This document shows, in pieces, positions 2,181 through 43,018 of a stretch of DNA of 63,904 nt; position 1 is the first letter of the stretch; the number at the start of each line of letters is the position of its first letter. Source of the stretch: Octopus bimaculoides (Eukaryota); contig NC_068994.1 of assembly GCF_001194135.2 (NCBI RefSeq), positions 44,599,933 to 44,663,836 of the forward strand, written 5' to 3'. The notes under the pieces were generated by a model that saw only the letters and a program-made list of their open reading frames with translations, was not told the DNA's origin and searched no databases. The translations under genes and the position numbers were made by a program.

Positions 2181-3521
2181 ATGTATTCTGTCCAATCAAT
2201 GTACAGCAGCATGGGAAGTCAGTTCAATTTTGATTTCTGTCCTCCCACAATGGGCTCACCAAATAACCACCAGATTGGAAAATACTCACTCACCCCTAAT
2301 AATCATAACTTTTGCAACAAACGGACTTACAAAGGTGATAAACCCTACCGATGTGATATTTGTCGGAAAGGCTTCTGTCGACGTAGCAACCTTAGTAACC
2401 ATGAACGGTCTTCAGCATATGAAAAACACTTCTATTGTATGTATTGTAGAAAGGCTTTCTCTCAGCGTGCTCATTTGAAAACCCATGAAATAACCCATAC
2501 AGGACTTAAACCTTATTCGTGTGAATTCTGCTCAAAAACATTTGCCCAACGTGCCAACTTTGATAACCACCGACGCACACATACAGGTGAACGGCCCTAC
2601 CACTGCAGCTGGTGCTCAAAAGCTTTTGCTCAGTTGACAAACCTAAACAATCATGTACGGATTCATACTGGAGAACGGCCTTTTGTGTGTTCAATGTGTT
2701 CCAAGGCATTTAGCCAAGTTACAAACTTACGTAATCACGAACGTATCCACACAGGTGAAAAACCCTTTGTGTGCATATTTTGTGCAAAAGCATTCAGTCA
2801 AGTAACACACCTTCGAAATCATGAACGTGTTCACACTGGTGAAAAACCCTATACATGTTCCACTTGTTCTAAAGCTTTCAGTCAACGTGCTAATCTGGAT
2901 AATCACAAACGTATTCATACCGGTGAAAAACCATTTGCCTGTTTAGTATGTAAGAAATCTTTCTCACAAGTTACAAATTTACGGAACCATGAACGCATCC
3001 ATGCAGCATCAGGTAATGCCCCTTTGAACAAAAACAGCACCACTGCTAATAAAACCAACAATTATTACACTGATGCAGACAGCAACAATAATAGTTACCG
3101 GAAACATTATAACAACCAACAATCTCAGCACCATCCCATAAAACACCATCCACAAATCCAGAATCCAAATTCATCGCCAGATATCCAGGCTAGCACGTCC
3201 CCTACTGATCTCAATGTTCGAAATATGCCCCATCAACAGCAACTCCCGCCACCACCACTACCATCATTACCCCCTTCTTCTGCTACTGCCATTCGTCCCC
3301 AGCCAATAACCATCCCAAATTGGATGACTCCGCCCTCCTATGTACAACAAATCACTCCATCTTGGGAAAATAGTTACAACTGGTCATCTCGAAATTTCCC
3401 AATTGCTTCATCCCGGTGGAATTCCAGTAGCTCACAAAACATTCCTAGTCTGCTGCCCTGTGGCATTGGCCAAACCAACCATAGTATTGATTTAGATCCA
3501 AAACTGTATCAAAGAACCTAA
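2181..3521 (+). CDS. C2H2 zinc-finger protein ZNF-A (446 aa): 8 tandem fingers (first lacks terminal His), N/Q/H/P-rich linker, Trp-rich C-terminal motif
   Basis: Uninterrupted ORF with C-x2-C-x12-H-x3-H repeats and TGEKP/TGERP linkers; in-frame TAA at 2175-2177 fixes the start; both termini match the paralogue at 41330-43018. Confidence 0.95.
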   Translation: MYSVQSMYSSMGSQFNFDFCPPTMGSPNNHQIGKYSLTPNNHNFCNKRTYKGDKPYRCDICRKGFCRRSNLSNHERSSAYEKHFYCMYCRKAFSQRAHLKTHEITHTGLKPYSCEFCSKTFAQRANFDNHRRTHTGERPYHCSWCSKAFAQLTNLNNHVRIHTGERPFVCSMCSKAFSQVTNLRNHERIHTGEKPFVCIFCAKAFSQVTHLRNHERVHTGEKPYTCSTCSKAFSQRANLDNHKRIHTGEKPFACLVCKKSFSQVTNLRNHERIHAASGNAPLNKNSTTANKTNNYYTDADSNNNSYRKHYNNQQSQHHPIKHHPQIQNPNSSPDIQASTSPTDLNVRNMPHQQQLPPPPLPSLPPSSATAIRPQPITIPNWMTPPSYVQQITPSWENSYNWSSRNFPIASSRWNSSSSQNIPSLLPCGIGQTNHSIDLDPKLYQRT

Positions 3522-30477: not shown

Positions 30478-30993
30478 ATGTTAACAATCGAGAAGCGATT
30501 CTCCTGTGAAACCTGCGGCAAAATGTTCTTGCTGAGTAAAACTTTGCAGAAACACAAGAAGATACATGTTCTGGATACAAAGTCAAAAGTCCCACCAACA
30601 AACCATGAATATCACCCATGTCACAGATGTGATTTATGTGGGAAGGAACTAGCTCAGAAGAATTATCTCAAAATCCATCGAAGAACACACACGGGAGAAA
30701 AACCATACAATTGTGAGATATGTGCAAAGAAGTTTGCTCGTCGAGACGCCCTCCGCATTCATGAGAGAACGCACAAAAGAGAAAAGCCTTTCTATTGTGA
30801 CATCTGTTCAAAGCATTTCGCACAAAAAAACTATTTAAAAATTCATAAACGTATACACACTGGTGAGAAACCCTTTCACTGTGATGTATGTATACAACAG
30901 TTTGCTCGTAGTGACACCCTCCTGAGACACAAAAGGACTCATAAAACAAATGAAAAACAAGAGCCAAAAGAGAAAGAAAAGCATAATGATTGA
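30478..30993 (+). CDS. C2H2 zinc-finger protein ZNF-B (171 aa, 5 fingers)
   Basis: One isolated finger then four tandem fingers with TGEKP/KREKP linkers; acceptor-like ttctttttcttatccag ends at 30445 and a second cag ends at 30469, so an upstream exon is likely and the true N-terminus is uncertain. Confidence 0.9.
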   Translation: MLTIEKRFSCETCGKMFLLSKTLQKHKKIHVLDTKSKVPPTNHEYHPCHRCDLCGKELAQKNYLKIHRRTHTGEKPYNCEICAKKFARRDALRIHERTHKREKPFYCDICSKHFAQKNYLKIHKRIHTGEKPFHCDVCIQQFARSDTLLRHKRTHKTNEKQEPKEKEKHND

Positions 30994-38651: not shown

Positions 38652-40291
38652 TGTATGTACGTATGTATGTATGTATGTATGTATGTATGTGTATGTATGT
38701 ATGTATGTGTGTATGTATGTATGTATGCATGTATCCATGCAAGTACATATGTAAGGTCAAGAAGAGTCAAATTTATGGACAAAATTCTAACTCTTATTTC
38801 ATTTTCATTGCATTGATAATGCTTTTGAGAAAGATATTAACATAACAAACTCTTTAAAAATTTAAAAACATAAAAACTTCTTCCTCCTCAGACTGAAATC
38901 TTAGGTCTATTTAAGAAGTCGATATATAATAATATATTGACTTCTTAAATTGATGATTATAAAATAAATAATGAAGAAATAGATCCTAATGTCTACTGGC
39001 AACAAATCAACATTAAACTAAACTTTTGTTGAAACATCATCATTTTGATGATAATTATCAGTTAATTTGTGAATCAGTCAGGTTGCCCACTTTTTCTTGT
39101 TTAATTGTAACACAGATTTCTCATGCTTTGAACTATTAGAAGTGTTGACACATTCCAGAAAATTGTGCATTAGTATTCTAATTATAGTTGATAACAAGGG
39201 CATAAGAGTGATAGTTTTGTGAGAGAGTTGTCAACAAACATGTTGTGTTTGGGGTAGTAGTAGACACATGTTTCTTGATAGGTGTTCATGAATTTATCAG
39301 CATCCTCAAAATATATGAGCCTAGTTCAACATTTATTAATAGAAAGTGTTGACAACAGCTTTAATAGACAAAGAATCAAGGATGTTCATATCATATCACT
39401 ATGTTTTAGCTGTGTTCCTTACAAAAAATATCTAACTGTCAATGATTCTAGTTCAGCTGACTGTAAATTATTCGATGGTATGAAGTAGTTCACCAGTATA
39501 AATGGTCCATGCATGATATATTTTGTCAGTATTGCCTTACATTTACTGTGTTGAGCTTAAATACTCACTAGTGTAAACCTTGGAAAGCAATAAACTTGTG
39601 ATACACTACATGAAGTGTATATCTATGGCTTATCAGGGTTTGCATAACGACTACATTAATGGTTATCACAGCACTAAACTTGTGAAGTAAGGAATAATTA
39701 TTATATTTGTAGGGAAATTGAAACGTACACTCAAAGTCTTTATACCTACTGTGATAGATCTCAAAAATATGAAAATCAACTAATATTATATTTAAAATAG
39801 TGTGTGGCTGATATTACAGTTTTATCAATGAAATCTTATGAAAATATTTGCTACTAACATTGTTGTGAAATTTTAAAGTTATATTTATTGAGTACCTAAA
39901 CGTGCCTTTTTGGATGAAATCTTTGTGCTAGTTGCTTGATTTATTGGGTATCTACGTCACTTTTACAAGATTGAAATATAGAAGGGGTTTGCTAATTATT
40001 AGATATTCTTTGAGAATATGAAAGCTGACCACAACATCACAGAAAGATTAATAACACATAAGCAAATCAATTAATAAATATCACATCATGCTCACATAAT
40101 TATGTTTTCTTCAAAAATGTGCTCAGATGGTTTAAGTACATATGTACAAGATAACAGCTAACATATATATATATATACATATATACATATATTTATATAT
40201 TTAATACATATATCTATCTATATATATATACATACACACATCATATTATTTACAATAGATGGATAGGTGTCCTCATCTTGTTTGTTGTTAT

Positions 40292-40333
40292 CACAATGTT
40301 TCGGTTGATATACTCTCCAGCCTTCATCAGGTG
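40292..40333 (-). ncRNA. Decayed copy of the same hammerhead
   Basis: Minus strand CAC-CTGATGA-A-GGCTG[gagagtatat]CAACC-GAAAC-ATT-GTG; one stem II mismatch and AACGTT decayed to AACATT. Confidence 0.6.
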
Positions 40334-40660
40334 TTCTGGTGGAATTTCGAACCCAACCCTTTATTTGACAAATGGGATAAACTATTCTCATTCTTAGGGT
40401 ATGTTCCTGGTGTTATTTTTCTGTTGATACTATTTTTGAAGTCCCTGCCTGGGATTGAACTTAGAATCCGAGGGTTAGTAGCCCGTGCTCTTATCTACAA
40501 TTATGTACGTTATTTACAATGGATGGATTCTAAGTTCAATCCCAGGCAGGGACTTGAAAAATAATATCAACAGAAAAACAACATCAGCAACATACCTTAG
40601 GAATGAGAACAGTGTACCCCGTGAGTTAAATAAAGGGTTGGGTTCGAAATTCGACCAGAA

Positions 40661-40702
40661 CACCTGATGAAGGCTGGGGAGTACATCAGCCGAAACGTTG
40701 TG
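40661..40702 (+). ncRNA. Minimal type I hammerhead ribozyme (Penelope-like-element type)
   Basis: CAC-CTGATGA-A-GGCTG[gggagtacat]CAGCC-GAAAC-GTT-GTG: full core, 5-bp stem II, 3-bp stem I, palindromic AACGTT in place of stem III. Confidence 0.75.
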
Positions 40703-40805
40703 ATAATAACAAACAAGGTGAGGACACCTATCTGTCCATTGTAAATAATGTGCATAATTCCTCATCTCAAAAATATAGAGTACTATATATATATTTATAT
40801 ATATA

Positions 40806-41237
40806 NNNNNNNNNNNNNNNNNNNNNNNNNNNNNNNNNNNNNNNNNNNNNNNNNNNNNNNNNNNNNNNNNNNNNNNNNNNNNNNNNNNNNNNNNNNNNNN
40901 NNNNNNNNNNNNNNNNNNNNNNNNNNNNNNNNNNNNNNNNNNNNNNNNNNNNNNNNNNNNNNNNNNNNNNNNNNNNNNNNNNNNNNNNNNNNNNNNNNNN
41001 NNNNNNNNNNNNNNNNNNNNNNNNNNNNNNNNNNNNNNNNNNNNNNNNNNNNNNNNNNNNNNNNNNNNNNNNNNNNNNNNNNNNNNNNNNNNNNNNNNNN
41101 NNNNNNNNNNNNNNNNNNNNNNNNNNNNNNNNNNNNNNNNNNNNNNNNNNNNNNNNNNNNNNNNNNNNNNNNNNNNNNNNNNNNNNNNNNNNNNNNNNNN
41201 NNNNNNNNNNNNNNNNNNNNNNNNNNNNNNNNNNNNN
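40806..41237. other. Assembly gap (N run) directly 3' of the ZNF-C stop
   Basis: N run. Other gaps: 45692-45936, 55278-55637, 57750-58038, 62862-62871. Confidence 1.
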
Positions 41238-41329: not shown

Positions 41330-43018
41330 CTATATTGTGTACTCAATTCCTTGCTTTCCTTGTCTCATCCCACAAGGGAAGCCACCAGGTGTATTAGTCC
41401 AGCCAGGGTTCCATACAGGAGCCATTGTGAAACCTCGTGACCACATGTAGTTATTTTCCCAGCTTTGTGGTATCTGATGGCGAGACGATGTATTCATCCA
41501 TGACGTCGGAGGAAGAGAAGATGGCCCTCGAGGATGAGAAGCAAAAGATTGCGGATCTCTGAGATAATCCCCTTCATACCGTTGTACCATGTGATCTGTA
41601 TTTTTCATGTCCTGTCGCATGTGATGACTATGAGATGTGATTGACGTCTTGCAACAGATATCAGAATTGAAAGACTGTTGTTTGGCTGAGGTATGAGTGT
41701 GACTTCTTTTATGAAGCTCTAAATCTGTCCTCTGGGAGTAGACTTTCCCACAGTTTAGCATTTTGTTATTATGATGCGTATGTTTGTGTGCCTCAATCTC
41801 AAGAGAGTGAGCAAATATCTTCCCACAAATATTGCAACTGAATGGCAACATGGGAGCGTTCTGTTCTTTTTCTGAGGTGATGGCGGTATTATGTGTTCGT
41901 TTATGATTCTTTAAGATTGCACGTTGAGCAAAAGCTTTCCCACAATATTCACATTTGAATGGCTTTTCTCCAGTATGTGTTCTGCGATGATTATCAAAGT
42001 TAGTTCTCTGGGCAAATGCCTTCCCGCAAAAGTTACATTTAAAAGGTCTTTCACCAGTATGAATACGTTTATGATTATCGAGATGTGTTCTTTGAGTAAA
42101 CATCTTCTCACAATACTCACACTTGAAAGGTTTCTCTCCTGTGTGTGTTCGTTTGTGGTTATCAAGATGAGTTCTTTGAATAAATGCTTTACCACAAAAG
42201 TCACATATGAATGGCTTCTCTCCTGTATGAATTCGTTTGTGGTTATCAAGGTTTGTACGTTGTGCAAATGCTTTTTCACAGAAAACACATTTGAACGGTT
42301 TTTCTCCAGTATGCGTTCGACGATGATTATCAAGATTGACTACCTGAGCAAATGCTTTGTCACAGAAAGAACAAACGAATGGTTTTTCACCTGTATGGAT
42401 ACGTTTGTGGTTAACTAAATTTACAATCTGTGCAAATGCTTTATCACAGAAGTCACATTTAAATGGTTTCTCTCCTGTGTGAACACGTTCATGATATTTA
42501 AGATTAGTTATCTGACTGAATGACTTTGAACAGTACGAGCAAGAAAATGGTTTCTCTCCAGTATGAACCCGTTCGTGATTTTCCACATTTGTCTGTTGAC
42601 TGAAAGACTTTGAACAGAATCCACACTGATAAGGTTTCTCTCCTGTATGAGTCCGTTTATGATTATCGTAATTAGCTTTTTGAGCAAATGCTTTATCGCA
42701 ATAAGTGCAATTAAATGGTTTCTGCCCTGTGTGTGTTAACTCATGAGTTGTTAATCGAGCCCTCTGAGAAAATGCCTTCTGACAATAACTACAAAAGAAA
42801 TGCTTCTCTCCAGCTGGCATCATTTCATGATTACTTAAATTAACTTTTCTGGAAAACCCTTTGCGGCAGACATTACATCTGAATGGTTTATCATTTGAAA
42901 ACCCCATTTTGTTATCATTATGGCAATGATGCTGTGACTGGTTTTGAGAGAAGGGTTTGTTTGGTGGATCAAAGTTAAATTGATTCCCCATTGGGTATAA
43001 TGACTGAGTAGAATACAT
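41330..43018 (-). CDS. C2H2 zinc-finger protein ZNF-C (562 aa): 12 tandem fingers (first lacks terminal His), one separate finger, one decayed finger, Trp-rich C-terminal motif
   Basis: Uninterrupted ORF with canonical fingers and TGEKP linkers; paralogous termini to ZNF-A. Confidence 0.95.
   Translation of the reverse strand: MYSTQSLYPMGNQFNFDPPNKPFSQNQSQHHCHNDNKMGFSNDKPFRCNVCRKGFSRKVNLSNHEMMPAGEKHFFCSYCQKAFSQRARLTTHELTHTGQKPFNCTYCDKAFAQKANYDNHKRTHTGEKPYQCGFCSKSFSQQTNVENHERVHTGEKPFSCSYCSKSFSQITNLKYHERVHTGEKPFKCDFCDKAFAQIVNLVNHKRIHTGEKPFVCSFCDKAFAQVVNLDNHRRTHTGEKPFKCVFCEKAFAQRTNLDNHKRIHTGEKPFICDFCGKAFIQRTHLDNHKRTHTGEKPFKCEYCEKMFTQRTHLDNHKRIHTGERPFKCNFCGKAFAQRTNFDNHRRTHTGEKPFKCEYCGKAFAQRAILKNHKRTHNTAITSEKEQNAPMLPFSCNICGKIFAHSLEIEAHKHTHHNNKMLNCGKVYSQRTDLELHKRSHTHTSAKQQSFNSDICCKTSITSHSHHMRQDMKNTDHMVQRYEGDYLRDPQSFASHPRGPSSLPPTSWMNTSSRHQIPQSWENNYMWSRGFTMAPVWNPGWTNTPGGFPCGMRQGKQGIEYTI

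What the first reader, a model, noticed from the sequence alone, without database searches (positions are those of the whole stretch)
3321..3521. Unnamed Trp-rich C-terminal module conserved between ZNF-A and ZNF-C
Seen: A has WMTPPSYVQQITPSWENSYNWSSRNFPIASSRWNSSSSQNIPSLLPCGIGQ and C (41330-41500) has WMNTSSRHQIPQSWENNYMWSRGFTMAPVWNPGWTNTPGGFPCGMRQ. Shared pattern: WM-x6/7-QI-x2-SWEN-x-Y-x-WS-R-x-F-x2-A-x2/3-WN...PCG-x2-Q. The linkers before it are unrelated in length and sequence. Established: cephalopod C2H2 genes are greatly expanded, and large C2H2 families elsewhere depend on effector modules such as KRAB or ZAD. I recognise no named domain here. Inference: a lineage-specific cofactor-binding or activation/repression module defining a ZNF subfamily.
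Basis: partly seen in the sequence, partly recalled or inferred. Interest (0 to 1): 0.72.

Follow-up and report, generated by a model that had tools for sequence, protein, structure and literature searches.

The report
Conserved Trp-rich tail motif, cephalopod ZNFs
The two octopus zinc-finger genes really do share a tryptophan-rich C-terminal motif, which together with an N-terminal motif marks a small, previously unnamed zinc-finger subfamily found in octopuses, argonauts and cuttlefish; it is under selection and predicted disordered, so it is most likely a partner-docking site, though its function is untested.

Summary
The window comes from Octopus bimaculoides chromosome CM046614.1. ZNF-A (2181-3521, +) and ZNF-C (41330-43018, -) are single-exon poly-C2H2 genes, and their last ~60 residues align far better than chance (score 94; 5000 shuffles averaged 31 with a maximum of 70).

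The motif is not confined to these two genes. A whole-library HMMER search found the same tail in 12 other protein clusters. Every named cluster is from a coleoid cephalopod: Octopus vulgaris, O. sinensis and O. bimaculoides, Argonauta hians, Sepia pharaonis and S. esculenta.

- **Shared architecture:** full-length members have an N-terminal motif at Met1 (MYxxQxxYxxGNQFNFD), a C2H2 array, a low-complexity linker, and the tail core YLxQMxQSWENNYxWSRGFP...W.N.P..C..KQxKQ.
- **Conservation:** between octopus and cuttlefish orthologues the tail core is 73% identical with no gaps. The linker is 17-47% identical and gappy.
- **Selection:** dN in the tail core is about half that of its flanks, and dN/dS is about 0.25.
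- **Known domains:** nothing in Pfam or the PDB matches.
- **Structure:** AlphaFold2 predicts both motifs as disordered.

It is therefore a conserved linear motif, not a folded domain. It most likely docks a nuclear partner, but that is inference. It marks a small subfamily, not the bulk of the cephalopod ZNF expansion.

The parts
2181..3521 (+). ZNF-A: a single-exon CDS of 446 aa, made of an N-terminal motif, 8 C2H2 fingers, a low-complexity linker and the Trp-rich tail
   Evidence: ORF list. Exact match to a gene called on O. bimaculoides CM046614.1. Pfam finds zf-C2H2 eight times. AlphaFold2 folds only residues 52-278.
2181..2237 (+). ZNF-A N-terminal family motif, MYSVQSMYSSMGSQFNFDF, starting at Met1
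   Evidence: M1, Y2, Q14 and F17 are invariant in the 10-protein family alignment. A local HMM of the motif hits only A and C in the window.
2346..3002 (+). ZNF-A C2H2 finger array (residues ~56-274); finger 1 is atypical (CDIC...NHERSSAYEKH)
   Evidence: The same atypical first finger occurs in ZNF-C and in the Sepia esculenta relative L009.
3003..3290 (+). ZNF-A linker, rich in N, Q, S, P and H, not conserved and predicted disordered
   Evidence: It does not align with the ZNF-C linker. pLDDT is 30-38.
3291..3473 (+). ZNF-A conserved C-terminal module (residues 371-431: IRPQPITIPNWMTPPSYVQQITPSWENSYNWSSRNFPIASSRWNSSSSQNIPSLLPCGIGQ)
   Evidence: Family alignments A3 and A4. The family tail HMM scores it 78 bits.
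3339..3404 (+). ZNF-A tail core (Y387-I408: YVQQITPSWENSYNWSSRNFPI), the most conserved stretch
   Evidence: Column information peaks at W395, W401, Y399, F406, I391 (Met in most members) and R404. W395 and Y399 are invariant across full-length members.
41330..43018 (-). ZNF-C: a single-exon CDS of 562 aa with the same architecture but a longer finger array
42968..43018 (-). ZNF-C N-terminal family motif, MYSTQSLYPMGNQFNFD
41351..41524 (-). ZNF-C conserved C-terminal module (residues 499-556: PSSLPPTSWMNTSSRHQIPQSWENNYMWSRGFTMAPVWNPGWTNTPGGFPCGMRQGKQ)
   Evidence: The family tail HMM scores it 94 bits.
41417..41482 (-). ZNF-C tail core (R513-P534: RHQIPQSWENNYMWSRGFTMAP)

Best explanation
Bases 3321-3521 encode the C-terminal end of a single-exon poly-C2H2 transcription-factor-like protein. 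Its core, (Y)LxQ(M/I)xQSWENNYxWSRGFP, is followed by a looser W.N.P...C..KQxKQ stretch. This is a conserved linear motif inside an otherwise fast-evolving, disordered, low-complexity tail.

Together with a second short motif at the extreme N-terminus (MYxxQ(S/P)xYxxG(N/K)QFxFD), it defines a small ZNF subfamily that predates the octopus-cuttlefish split.

The most likely mechanism is as follows. The finger array binds DNA. The tail motif, possibly acting with the N-terminal motif, is a docking site that becomes ordered only when it binds a conserved nuclear partner such as a co-regulator or chromatin factor. The conserved residues W, N, Y, W, R and F fall at alternate positions. That pattern suggests an extended strand presenting one aromatic face.

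Shown here: the motif exists, it is specific to the family, it is under purifying selection, it is predicted disordered, and it matches no known domain. Inferred: that it binds a partner, what that partner is, and the effect on transcription.
For: - **Reality:** the A and C tails score 94, against a shuffle mean of 31, SD 6.5 and 0 of 5000 reaching it. The similarity is at protein level, not DNA level.
- **Family:** an exhaustive HMMER search of 1.84 billion representatives returned 20 hits, 12 of them true. All true hits carry the same core.
- **Taxa:** named members come from Octopus vulgaris, O. sinensis and O. bimaculoides, Argonauta hians and Sepia pharaonis. Two of the RNA-seq runs with a member are Sepia esculenta larvae.
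- **Shared architecture:** M1, Y2, Q14 and F17, and W395 and Y399, are the only invariant residues outside the fingers.
- **Constraint across orders:** between octopus P0063 and the cuttlefish-type orthologue P0121, the fingers are 80-93% identical. The linker is 17-47% identical with many gaps. The tail core is 22/30 identical with no gaps.
- **Constraint by substitution rate:** for P0109 versus P0125, tail-core dN is 0.073. The flanking regions are 0.153 and 0.178 and the fingers 0.017. Tail-core dN/dS is 0.25.
- **Disorder:** the tail alone has a mean pLDDT of 59 with no secondary structure. In full-length A, residues 1-51 and 279-446 have pLDDT 30-38, while the fingers reach 70-92.
- **Alternating conservation:** the highest-information columns are W35, W41, Y39, F46, M30 and R44, spaced by even numbers of residues.
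- **No known domain:**. Two papers on cephalopod and metazoan ZNF expansions describe no accessory motif in cephalopod ZNFs.
Against: - No binding partner or transcriptional effect has been shown.
- The motif has almost no acidic residues, so it is not a classical acidic activation domain.
- The low pLDDT could partly reflect shallow alignments of 10-14 sequences.
- The dN/dS estimate rests on one pair and 40 codons, with 6.5 non-synonymous and 6.5 synonymous changes.
- In two RNA-seq contigs of family members (L009-L013 and L014) the tail lies in the +1 frame relative to the finger ORF. Some paralogues may therefore lack or dispense with it.
- The searches could only see annotated or assembled proteins, so Nautilus and other molluscs are not formally excluded.
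- No orthologues of A or C themselves were recovered from other Octopus species.
Confidence: 0.5

Rival explanations
1. The tail is a self-association or intramolecular element. The aromatic N-terminal and C-terminal motifs would bind each other within or between molecules. That could give dimerisation (as SCAN, ZAD and BTB do for other ZNFs), auto-inhibition, or sticker-driven condensates, rather than recruiting a separate cofactor.
For: The two motifs always occur together in full-length members. Both are rich in aromatic and polar residues and both are predicted disordered. Several known ZNF-associated modules are dimerisation devices (established knowledge of SCAN, ZAD and BTB).
Against: AlphaFold2 on full-length A gave no confident structure for either motif, so no N-C contact is suggested. 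The strict positional conservation of W-x3-Y-x-W-x-R-x-F fits a specific interface better than generic stickers. This reading overlaps with the best explanation, since both involve protein docking.
Confidence: 0.2
2. The tail is a trafficking or stability signal, such as a non-classical nuclear import signal or a degron, rather than a transcriptional effector.
For: It sits at the extreme C-terminus in a disordered region and is followed by a weakly basic, conserved K/RQxKQ(KEP) stretch.
Against: It has no canonical basic NLS or PY-NLS pattern (by inspection; its FP/YP is not PY). Poly-C2H2 proteins usually enter the nucleus through their fingers (established knowledge). A conserved core of about 25 residues with four or five invariant aromatics is more than typical degrons or NLSs need.
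Confidence: 0.12
3. The tail is an auxiliary nucleic-acid-contacting extension, with aromatic and Arg residues stacking on DNA or RNA to modulate finger binding.
For: The conserved residues are W, Y, F and R, and the motif is always tethered to a finger array.
Against: It is separated from the fingers by a non-conserved linker of roughly 100 to 250 residues and variable length. It carries little net positive charge. No similarity to known nucleic-acid-binding motifs was found.
Confidence: 0.08
4. The similarity is functionless residue of a recent duplication or gene conversion between A and C, or reflects a DNA-level element such as a TE fragment or 3' regulatory sequence.
For: A and C are paralogues 38 kb apart on one chromosome.
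Against: Nucleotide identity in the tail is only 54%, and 10 of 25 identical residues use different codons. The linkers have diverged beyond alignment while the tail has not. The motif is conserved between octopods and cuttlefish, and its dN is lower than that of the flanks.
Confidence: 0.03

Closest known systems
KRAB-ZNF (tetrapods) and FiNZ-ZNF (cyprinid fish)
   Same: A lineage-restricted, non-finger sequence is attached to tandem C2H2 arrays and defines a subfamily. The presumed role is recruiting a partner to DNA-bound fingers.
   Different: KRAB and FiNZ are N-terminal, roughly 40-75 residues, helical, and mark families of hundreds of fast-evolving genes. This motif is C-terminal, paired with a separate N-terminal motif, predicted disordered, and has no Pfam KRAB match. 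It marks only about a dozen clusters. Some of those are more than 99% identical between Octopus species.
ZAD (insects), SCAN and BTB/POZ zinc-finger-associated domains
   Same: They are accessory modules of C2H2 proteins that define subfamilies.
   Different: All three are folded dimerisation domains, and ZAD coordinates zinc through four Cys. This tail has at most one semi-conserved Cys, no predicted fold and no Pfam match.
SNAG motif of Snail/Gfi/Scratch, and the Sp box and Btd box of Sp factors
   Same: These are short conserved linear motifs in disordered regions flanking a C2H2 array. SNAG sits exactly at Met1, as the MYxxQ motif does here, and works by docking a co-repressor (established knowledge). 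This is the closest analogy for how the motif probably works.
   Different: The sequences are unrelated. No partner is known here. Here there are two motifs, one at each end of the protein.
Trp-based docking motifs: Hox YPWM hexapeptide, WRPW (Groucho), GW182 W-motifs
   Same: They are disordered peptides whose Trp side chains insert into pockets of a folded partner. The tail's Trp residues are flanked by S, N, G or P, as in GW182-type W-motifs.
   Different: The upstream 'WM' is not conserved across the family (column 20 has W in only 6 of 14), so it is not a hexapeptide. There is no WRPW. The Trp spacing is fixed (W-x3-Y-x-W) rather than scattered GW repeats.

Membership tests
KRAB-ZNF | N-terminal KRAB A/B box matching Pfam PF01352 | tested here: not met
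   Pfam scans of full-length A and C and of their C-terminal parts at E<=10, and of 14 family tails at E<=1, gave no KRAB hit. The 'KRAB' names on two Sepia pharaonis entries are depositor labels not backed by any KRAB sequence in P0122 or P0129.
ZAD-ZNF | N-terminal module of about 75 aa with four zinc-coordinating Cys (PF07776) | tested here: not met
   No Pfam hit. The N-terminal motif has no Cys, and the tail has one partly conserved Cys.
SCAN / BTB ZNFs | Folded helical dimerisation domain (PF02023 or PF00651) | tested here: not met
   No Pfam hit. AlphaFold2 finds no folded region outside residues 52-278.
Short linear motif / molecular recognition feature (class, not a homology family) | A short island of conservation within a poorly conserved region | tested here: met
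   The tail core is 22/30 identical with no gaps, against 17-47% identity with gaps in the linker, between octopus and cuttlefish orthologues. Core dN is 0.073 against 0.15-0.18 in the flanks.
Short linear motif / molecular recognition feature (class, not a homology family) | Intrinsic disorder of the motif and its surroundings | tested here: met
   The tail alone has a mean pLDDT of 59 and no secondary structure. In full-length A, residues 279-446 have pLDDT 30-38. These are predictions from shallow alignments.
Short linear motif / molecular recognition feature (class, not a homology family) | Binds a folded partner | not testable with these tools
   Needs pull-down, AP-MS or complex prediction against coleoid nuclear proteins.
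Coleoid 'MY-head / W-tail' ZNF subfamily (defined here) | N-terminal MYxxQ(S/P)xYxxG(N/K)QFxF(D) motif at Met1 | tested here: met
   Present in A and C and in P0063, P0109, P0123, P0124, P0125, P0135 and P0149. Related forms occur in L009 and L014.
Coleoid 'MY-head / W-tail' ZNF subfamily (defined here) | C-terminal core QSWENNYxWSRGFP within the last ~100 residues | tested here: met
   The family HMM scores A at 78 bits and C at 94 bits, and nothing else in the window scores. Alignment.
Coleoid 'MY-head / W-tail' ZNF subfamily (defined here) | Tandem C2H2 array encoded with both motifs in one uninterrupted coding exon | tested here: met
   Gene length equals 3 x (aa + 1) for A, C, P0109, P0149, P0063, P0150 and P0124.
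GW182-type W-motif / Ago-hook | Multiple Trp flanked by G/S/T scattered in a disordered region, with variable spacing | tested here: inconclusive
   The Trp residues are flanked by S, N, G or P, but their spacing is fixed and Gly neighbours are in the minority. Binding was not tested.
Hox-type YPWM hexapeptide | An invariant Trp in a (Y/F)PWM context | tested here: not met
   The 'WM' of A and C is W in only 6 of 14 family tails (column 20).

The most novel reading that the evidence does not exclude
The N-terminal MYxxQ motif and the C-terminal W-tail together form a two-part, coleoid-specific effector system. It would recruit a conserved co-regulator to a small set of deeply conserved ZNF transcription factors. 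In some paralogues, inclusion of the tail would be switched at the RNA level by a short retained intron or a frame change between fingers and tail, giving tailed and tail-less isoforms.
Probability: 0.15. Interest if true: 0.7.

Novelty: new variant of a known kind. Interest (0 to 1): 0.45.

Why it matters
Cephalopod genomes carry one of the largest C2H2 expansions known. Yet neither paper I read on cephalopod and metazoan ZNF expansions (PMC12513265, PMC10547256) names any accessory or effector sequence for cephalopod ZNFs.

This motif pair gives a sequence handle on one old, conserved subfamily. Members P0063/P0150 and P0135/P0149 are more than 99% identical between Octopus species. Others are transcribed in cuttlefish larvae.

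It also gives a defined peptide of about 25 residues, with obvious point mutants, for finding a cephalopod co-regulator. The limits are clear: it concerns about a dozen clusters rather than the ~1,800-gene expansion, and its function is still inferred.

Tried and rejected
- **Word-indexed homologue search with the two tails**: no candidates.
- **Word-indexed search with 14 tails**: only P0136. The index needs three shared 5-mers, so it is unsuited to this short motif.
- **Full-length A search**: swamped by generic poly-ZNF hits. It was useful only because P0063 and P0109 happened to carry the tail.
- **A and C in the protein collection**: neither exact sequence is there, so their own clusters and orthologues could not be listed.
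- **Weak hits from the exhaustive search:** P0131, P0132 and P0134 are translations of short repeated DNA arrays whose repeat encodes 'LQWSRNFSVADC'. P0138 is another repeat protein. P0128 is a repeat-bearing protease-like protein, and P0139 is an unrelated membrane-protein-like sequence. All were rejected as chance matches. P0133 and P0137 were not fetched; I counted them as false positives only from their profile-match pattern.
- **Known domains:** Pfam and a PDB profile search found nothing.
- **Structure search:** not run, because both models are disordered in the motif and matches would be meaningless.
- **Hox-hexapeptide reading of 'WM':** rejected because that Trp is not conserved.
- **DNA-level or gene-conversion explanation:** rejected.
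- **Sample accessions:** SRR27666067, ERZ21867824, SRR25158xxx and SRR99700xx could not be tied to species through the paper library.
- **Albertin et al. 2015:** not held.

Full report
**Where the window comes from.** The two large ZNF ORFs match genes called on Octopus bimaculoides chromosome CM046614.1 (assembly GCA_001194135.2), near 44.60-44.65 Mb.

- ZNF-A is the ORF 2181-3521 on the + strand (446 aa, 8 C2H2 fingers).
- ZNF-C is the ORF 41330-43018 on the - strand (562 aa, about 14 fingers).
- A third ORF, ZNF-B (30478-30993, 171 aa), has fingers only.

**Checking the observation.** The coordinates and both quoted peptides are exact. The tails align with 25 identical positions. The local score is 94, against 31.4 +/- 6.5 (maximum 70) for 5000 shuffles. 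Each tail finds only the other gene when searched against the window, and a family HMM built later also hits only A and C there.

The similarity is at protein level. Nucleotide identity across the aligned tail is 54%, and 10 of the 25 identical residues use different codons. The linkers between fingers and tail do not align. A and C also share an N-terminal motif that starts at Met1: MYSVQSMYSSMGSQFNFD in A and MYSTQSLYPMGNQFNFD in C.

**Is it confined to these two genes?** No. Word-indexed searches with tails alone failed, and the full-length search was swamped by generic ZNFs. Two of those hits, however, carried both motifs: P0063 (Octopus vulgaris/sinensis 'zinc finger protein 2 homolog') and P0109.

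A four-tail profile was then searched exhaustively against 1.84 billion representatives. It gave 20 hits at E<=1e-3, of which 12 are true members: P0063, P0121-P0127, P0129, P0130, P0135 and P0136. Of the other eight, I fetched six, and they are repeat translations or unrelated proteins. P0133 and P0137 were not fetched and were counted as false positives from their match pattern alone.

Named members come from these species:
- Octopus vulgaris, O. sinensis and O. bimaculoides (P0135/P0149 and P0063/P0150)
- Argonauta hians (P0124)
- Acanthosepion (Sepia) pharaonis (P0122, P0127, P0129, P0140)

Contigs carrying P0136 come from five RNA-seq runs. Two of them (SRR23936181 and SRR31864755) are Sepia esculenta larvae. 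The motif therefore spans both octopods and decapods. No named member lies outside the cephalopods, but Logan- and ENA-only members have no species label. A and C themselves are absent from the searchable collection, so the count of 12 is a lower bound.

**Anatomy of the family.** Full-length members share one plan:
1. An N-terminal motif, MYxxQ(S/P)xYxxG(N/K)QFxF(D).
2. A tandem C2H2 array.
3. A long N/Q/S/P/H-rich linker.
4. The tail: (I/L)R(L/Y)QP..IP..(W)M.S.YLxQMxQSWENNYxWSRGFPxxP.(W)...W.N.P...C..KQxKQ.

Outside the fingers, the only invariant residues in the 10-protein alignment are M1, Y2, Q14 and F17 at the head, and W395 and Y399 in the tail. S403, R404, F406, P407 and N420 are nearly invariant.

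The highest-information columns in the 14-tail alignment are W35, W41, Y39, F46, M30 and R44. The strongest positions are separated by even numbers of residues (Y, M, Q, W, N, Y, W, R, F). That is the pattern of one face of an extended strand. This structural reading is my inference.

Each genomic member's coding sequence is one uninterrupted exon. In O. bimaculoides, four members (P0150 at 4.98 Mb, P0149 at 30.0 Mb, and A and C at 44.6 Mb) lie on the same chromosome but are dispersed. Only A and C are close, at 38 kb apart.

**Is it under constraint?** Three lines of evidence say yes.
- Between octopus P0063 and its cuttlefish-type orthologue P0121, the fingers are 80-93% identical. The linker is 17-47% identical with many gaps. 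The tail core is 22/30 identical without gaps, and the following 46 residues are about 50-56% identical.
- For P0109 versus P0125, Nei-Gojobori estimates give tail-core dN 0.073 and dN/dS 0.25. The C-linker dN is 0.153, the post-tail region 0.178, the N-linker 0.208 and the fingers 0.017. The N-terminal motif has dN/dS 0.12. The counts are small (6.5 non-synonymous changes in 40 codons), so this is supportive rather than decisive.
- Within Octopus, the older members are more than 99% identical over their whole length. They behave like conserved regulators rather than fast-evolving repeat-targeting ZNFs.

**Is it a known domain, or a domain at all?**
- Pfam finds nothing on the A and C tails at E<=10, or on any of 14 family tails at E<=1.
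- A profile search of PDB sequences finds nothing at E<=10.
- AlphaFold2 on the tail with the 14-sequence alignment gives a mean pLDDT of 59 and no secondary structure.
- On full-length A with a 10-sequence family alignment, only residues 52-278 (the fingers) are confident, at pLDDT 70-92. Residues 1-51 and 279-446, which include both motifs, score 30-38.

With the caveat of shallow alignments, the feature is a conserved linear motif in a disordered tail, not an autonomous fold. Two papers on cephalopod and metazoan ZNF expansions describe no accessory motif for cephalopod ZNFs, and further literature searches found none.

**Most likely mechanism.** The fingers bind DNA. The tail core, probably with the N-terminal motif, is a docking peptide that orders on binding a conserved nuclear partner. 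The nearest functional analogies are short terminal motifs of other C2H2 factors, such as SNAG at Met1 of Snail and Gfi, and Trp-insertion docking peptides. These are analogies from established knowledge, not homology.

The motif lacks acidic residues, which argues against a classical acidic activation domain. Rival roles are self-association or N-C interaction, a trafficking or stability signal, and an auxiliary nucleic-acid contact. Neutral paralogy and DNA-level explanations are effectively excluded.

The motif does define a subfamily, is lineage-restricted and is unnamed, and none of the stated refutation conditions holds. But it is a disordered linear motif rather than a module with a fold. 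It comes paired with an N-terminal motif. It marks a small old subfamily rather than the bulk of the cephalopod expansion. Its cofactor or effector role is untested.

**An unexplained side observation.** In two RNA-seq contigs of family members, the tail lies in the +1 frame relative to the finger ORF.
- **L009** (identical arrangement in L010-L013, from five runs, two of them confirmed Sepia esculenta): the finger ORF is 474-2216 and the tail ORF 2140-2580. The two frames overlap across an A8 run. L009 is an A/C-type relative that shares the atypical first finger.
- **L014** (species unknown): the finger ORF is 58-1506 and the tail ORF 1472-1942.

By inspection, a GT..AG interval of 109 nt (1478-1586, with a pyrimidine-rich acceptor) would rejoin the frames in L014. 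A 70-nt GT..AG interval (2155-2224), or a 1-nt change in the A8 run, would do so in L009. In both contigs the tail frame opens just where the finger frame closes, which is also the signature of a simple 1-nt indel. I cannot distinguish a retained intron from a real frameshift with these tools.

Noticed in passing
window 2181-2237 (+) and 42968-43018 (-): A and C share a second conserved motif at the extreme N-terminus (MYSxQSxYxxMGxQFNFD). It accompanies the tail in every full-length family member and is also predicted disordered. In the P0109/P0125 pair its dN/dS is 0.12.
   Followed up: yes
L009 2140-2216 (same in L010-L013); L014 1472-1506: In two RNA-seq contigs of family members (one from runs that include Sepia esculenta, one of unknown species), the W-tail is in the +1 frame relative to the finger ORF. 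In L009 the frames overlap across an A8 run. In L014 a 109-nt GT..AG interval (1478-1586) would restore the frame. This could be a retained short intron giving tailed and tail-less isoforms, or a real frameshift.
   Followed up: partly
P0127 (Sepia pharaonis CAE1244983.1, 301 aa): This gene model has the N-terminal motif, a linker and the W-tail but no C2H2 fingers. It is either an annotation artefact that splices out the array or a finger-less paralogue. Its likely relative L014 has about 13 fingers.
   Followed up: no
window 2346-2440 (+) and the matching part of ZNF-C; L009: The first finger of A, C and the Sepia esculenta relative is atypical but conserved: C-x2-C-x12-H, then about 8 residues before the next His (NHERSSAYEKH / NHEMMPAGEKH / NHEKAPSDEKH). 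It marks an A/C-type subgroup older than the octopod-decapod split.
   Followed up: partly
window 40242-40469 and 40525-40752: A large inverted repeat (228-nt arms, 89% complementary, 55-nt spacer) lies just 3' of ZNF-C, next to an assembly gap (40807-41237) and TA/CA microsatellites. It looks like a foldback or MITE-like element.
   Followed up: partly
window 30478-30993 (+): ZNF-B (171 aa, 5 fingers) lies between A and C but has neither the N-terminal motif nor the W-tail. The motifs are therefore not a general property of ZNFs in this neighbourhood.
   Followed up: yes
P0063 residues ~443-452 and ~509-525; P0121: In the P0063/P0121 orthologue pair the linker holds a second, duplicated conserved island (C(E/D)L(F/Y)xKNP...PPLPQPPP). 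It is specific to that branch of the family.
   Followed up: no
O. bimaculoides CM046614.1 (L015 4.98 Mb, L004 30.0 Mb, window 44.6 Mb); O. vulgaris OX597827.1: All four O. bimaculoides family members located so far sit on one chromosome, dispersed over 40 Mb. The two O. vulgaris members found, P0063 and P0135, also share one chromosome.
   Followed up: partly
P0131, P0132, P0134 (hits): These are three-frame translations of short repeated DNA arrays, apparently CRISPR-like, whose repeat encodes 'LQWSRNFSVADC'. They match the tail profile by chance through 'WSRNF', a false-positive source for any search with this motif.
   Followed up: yes
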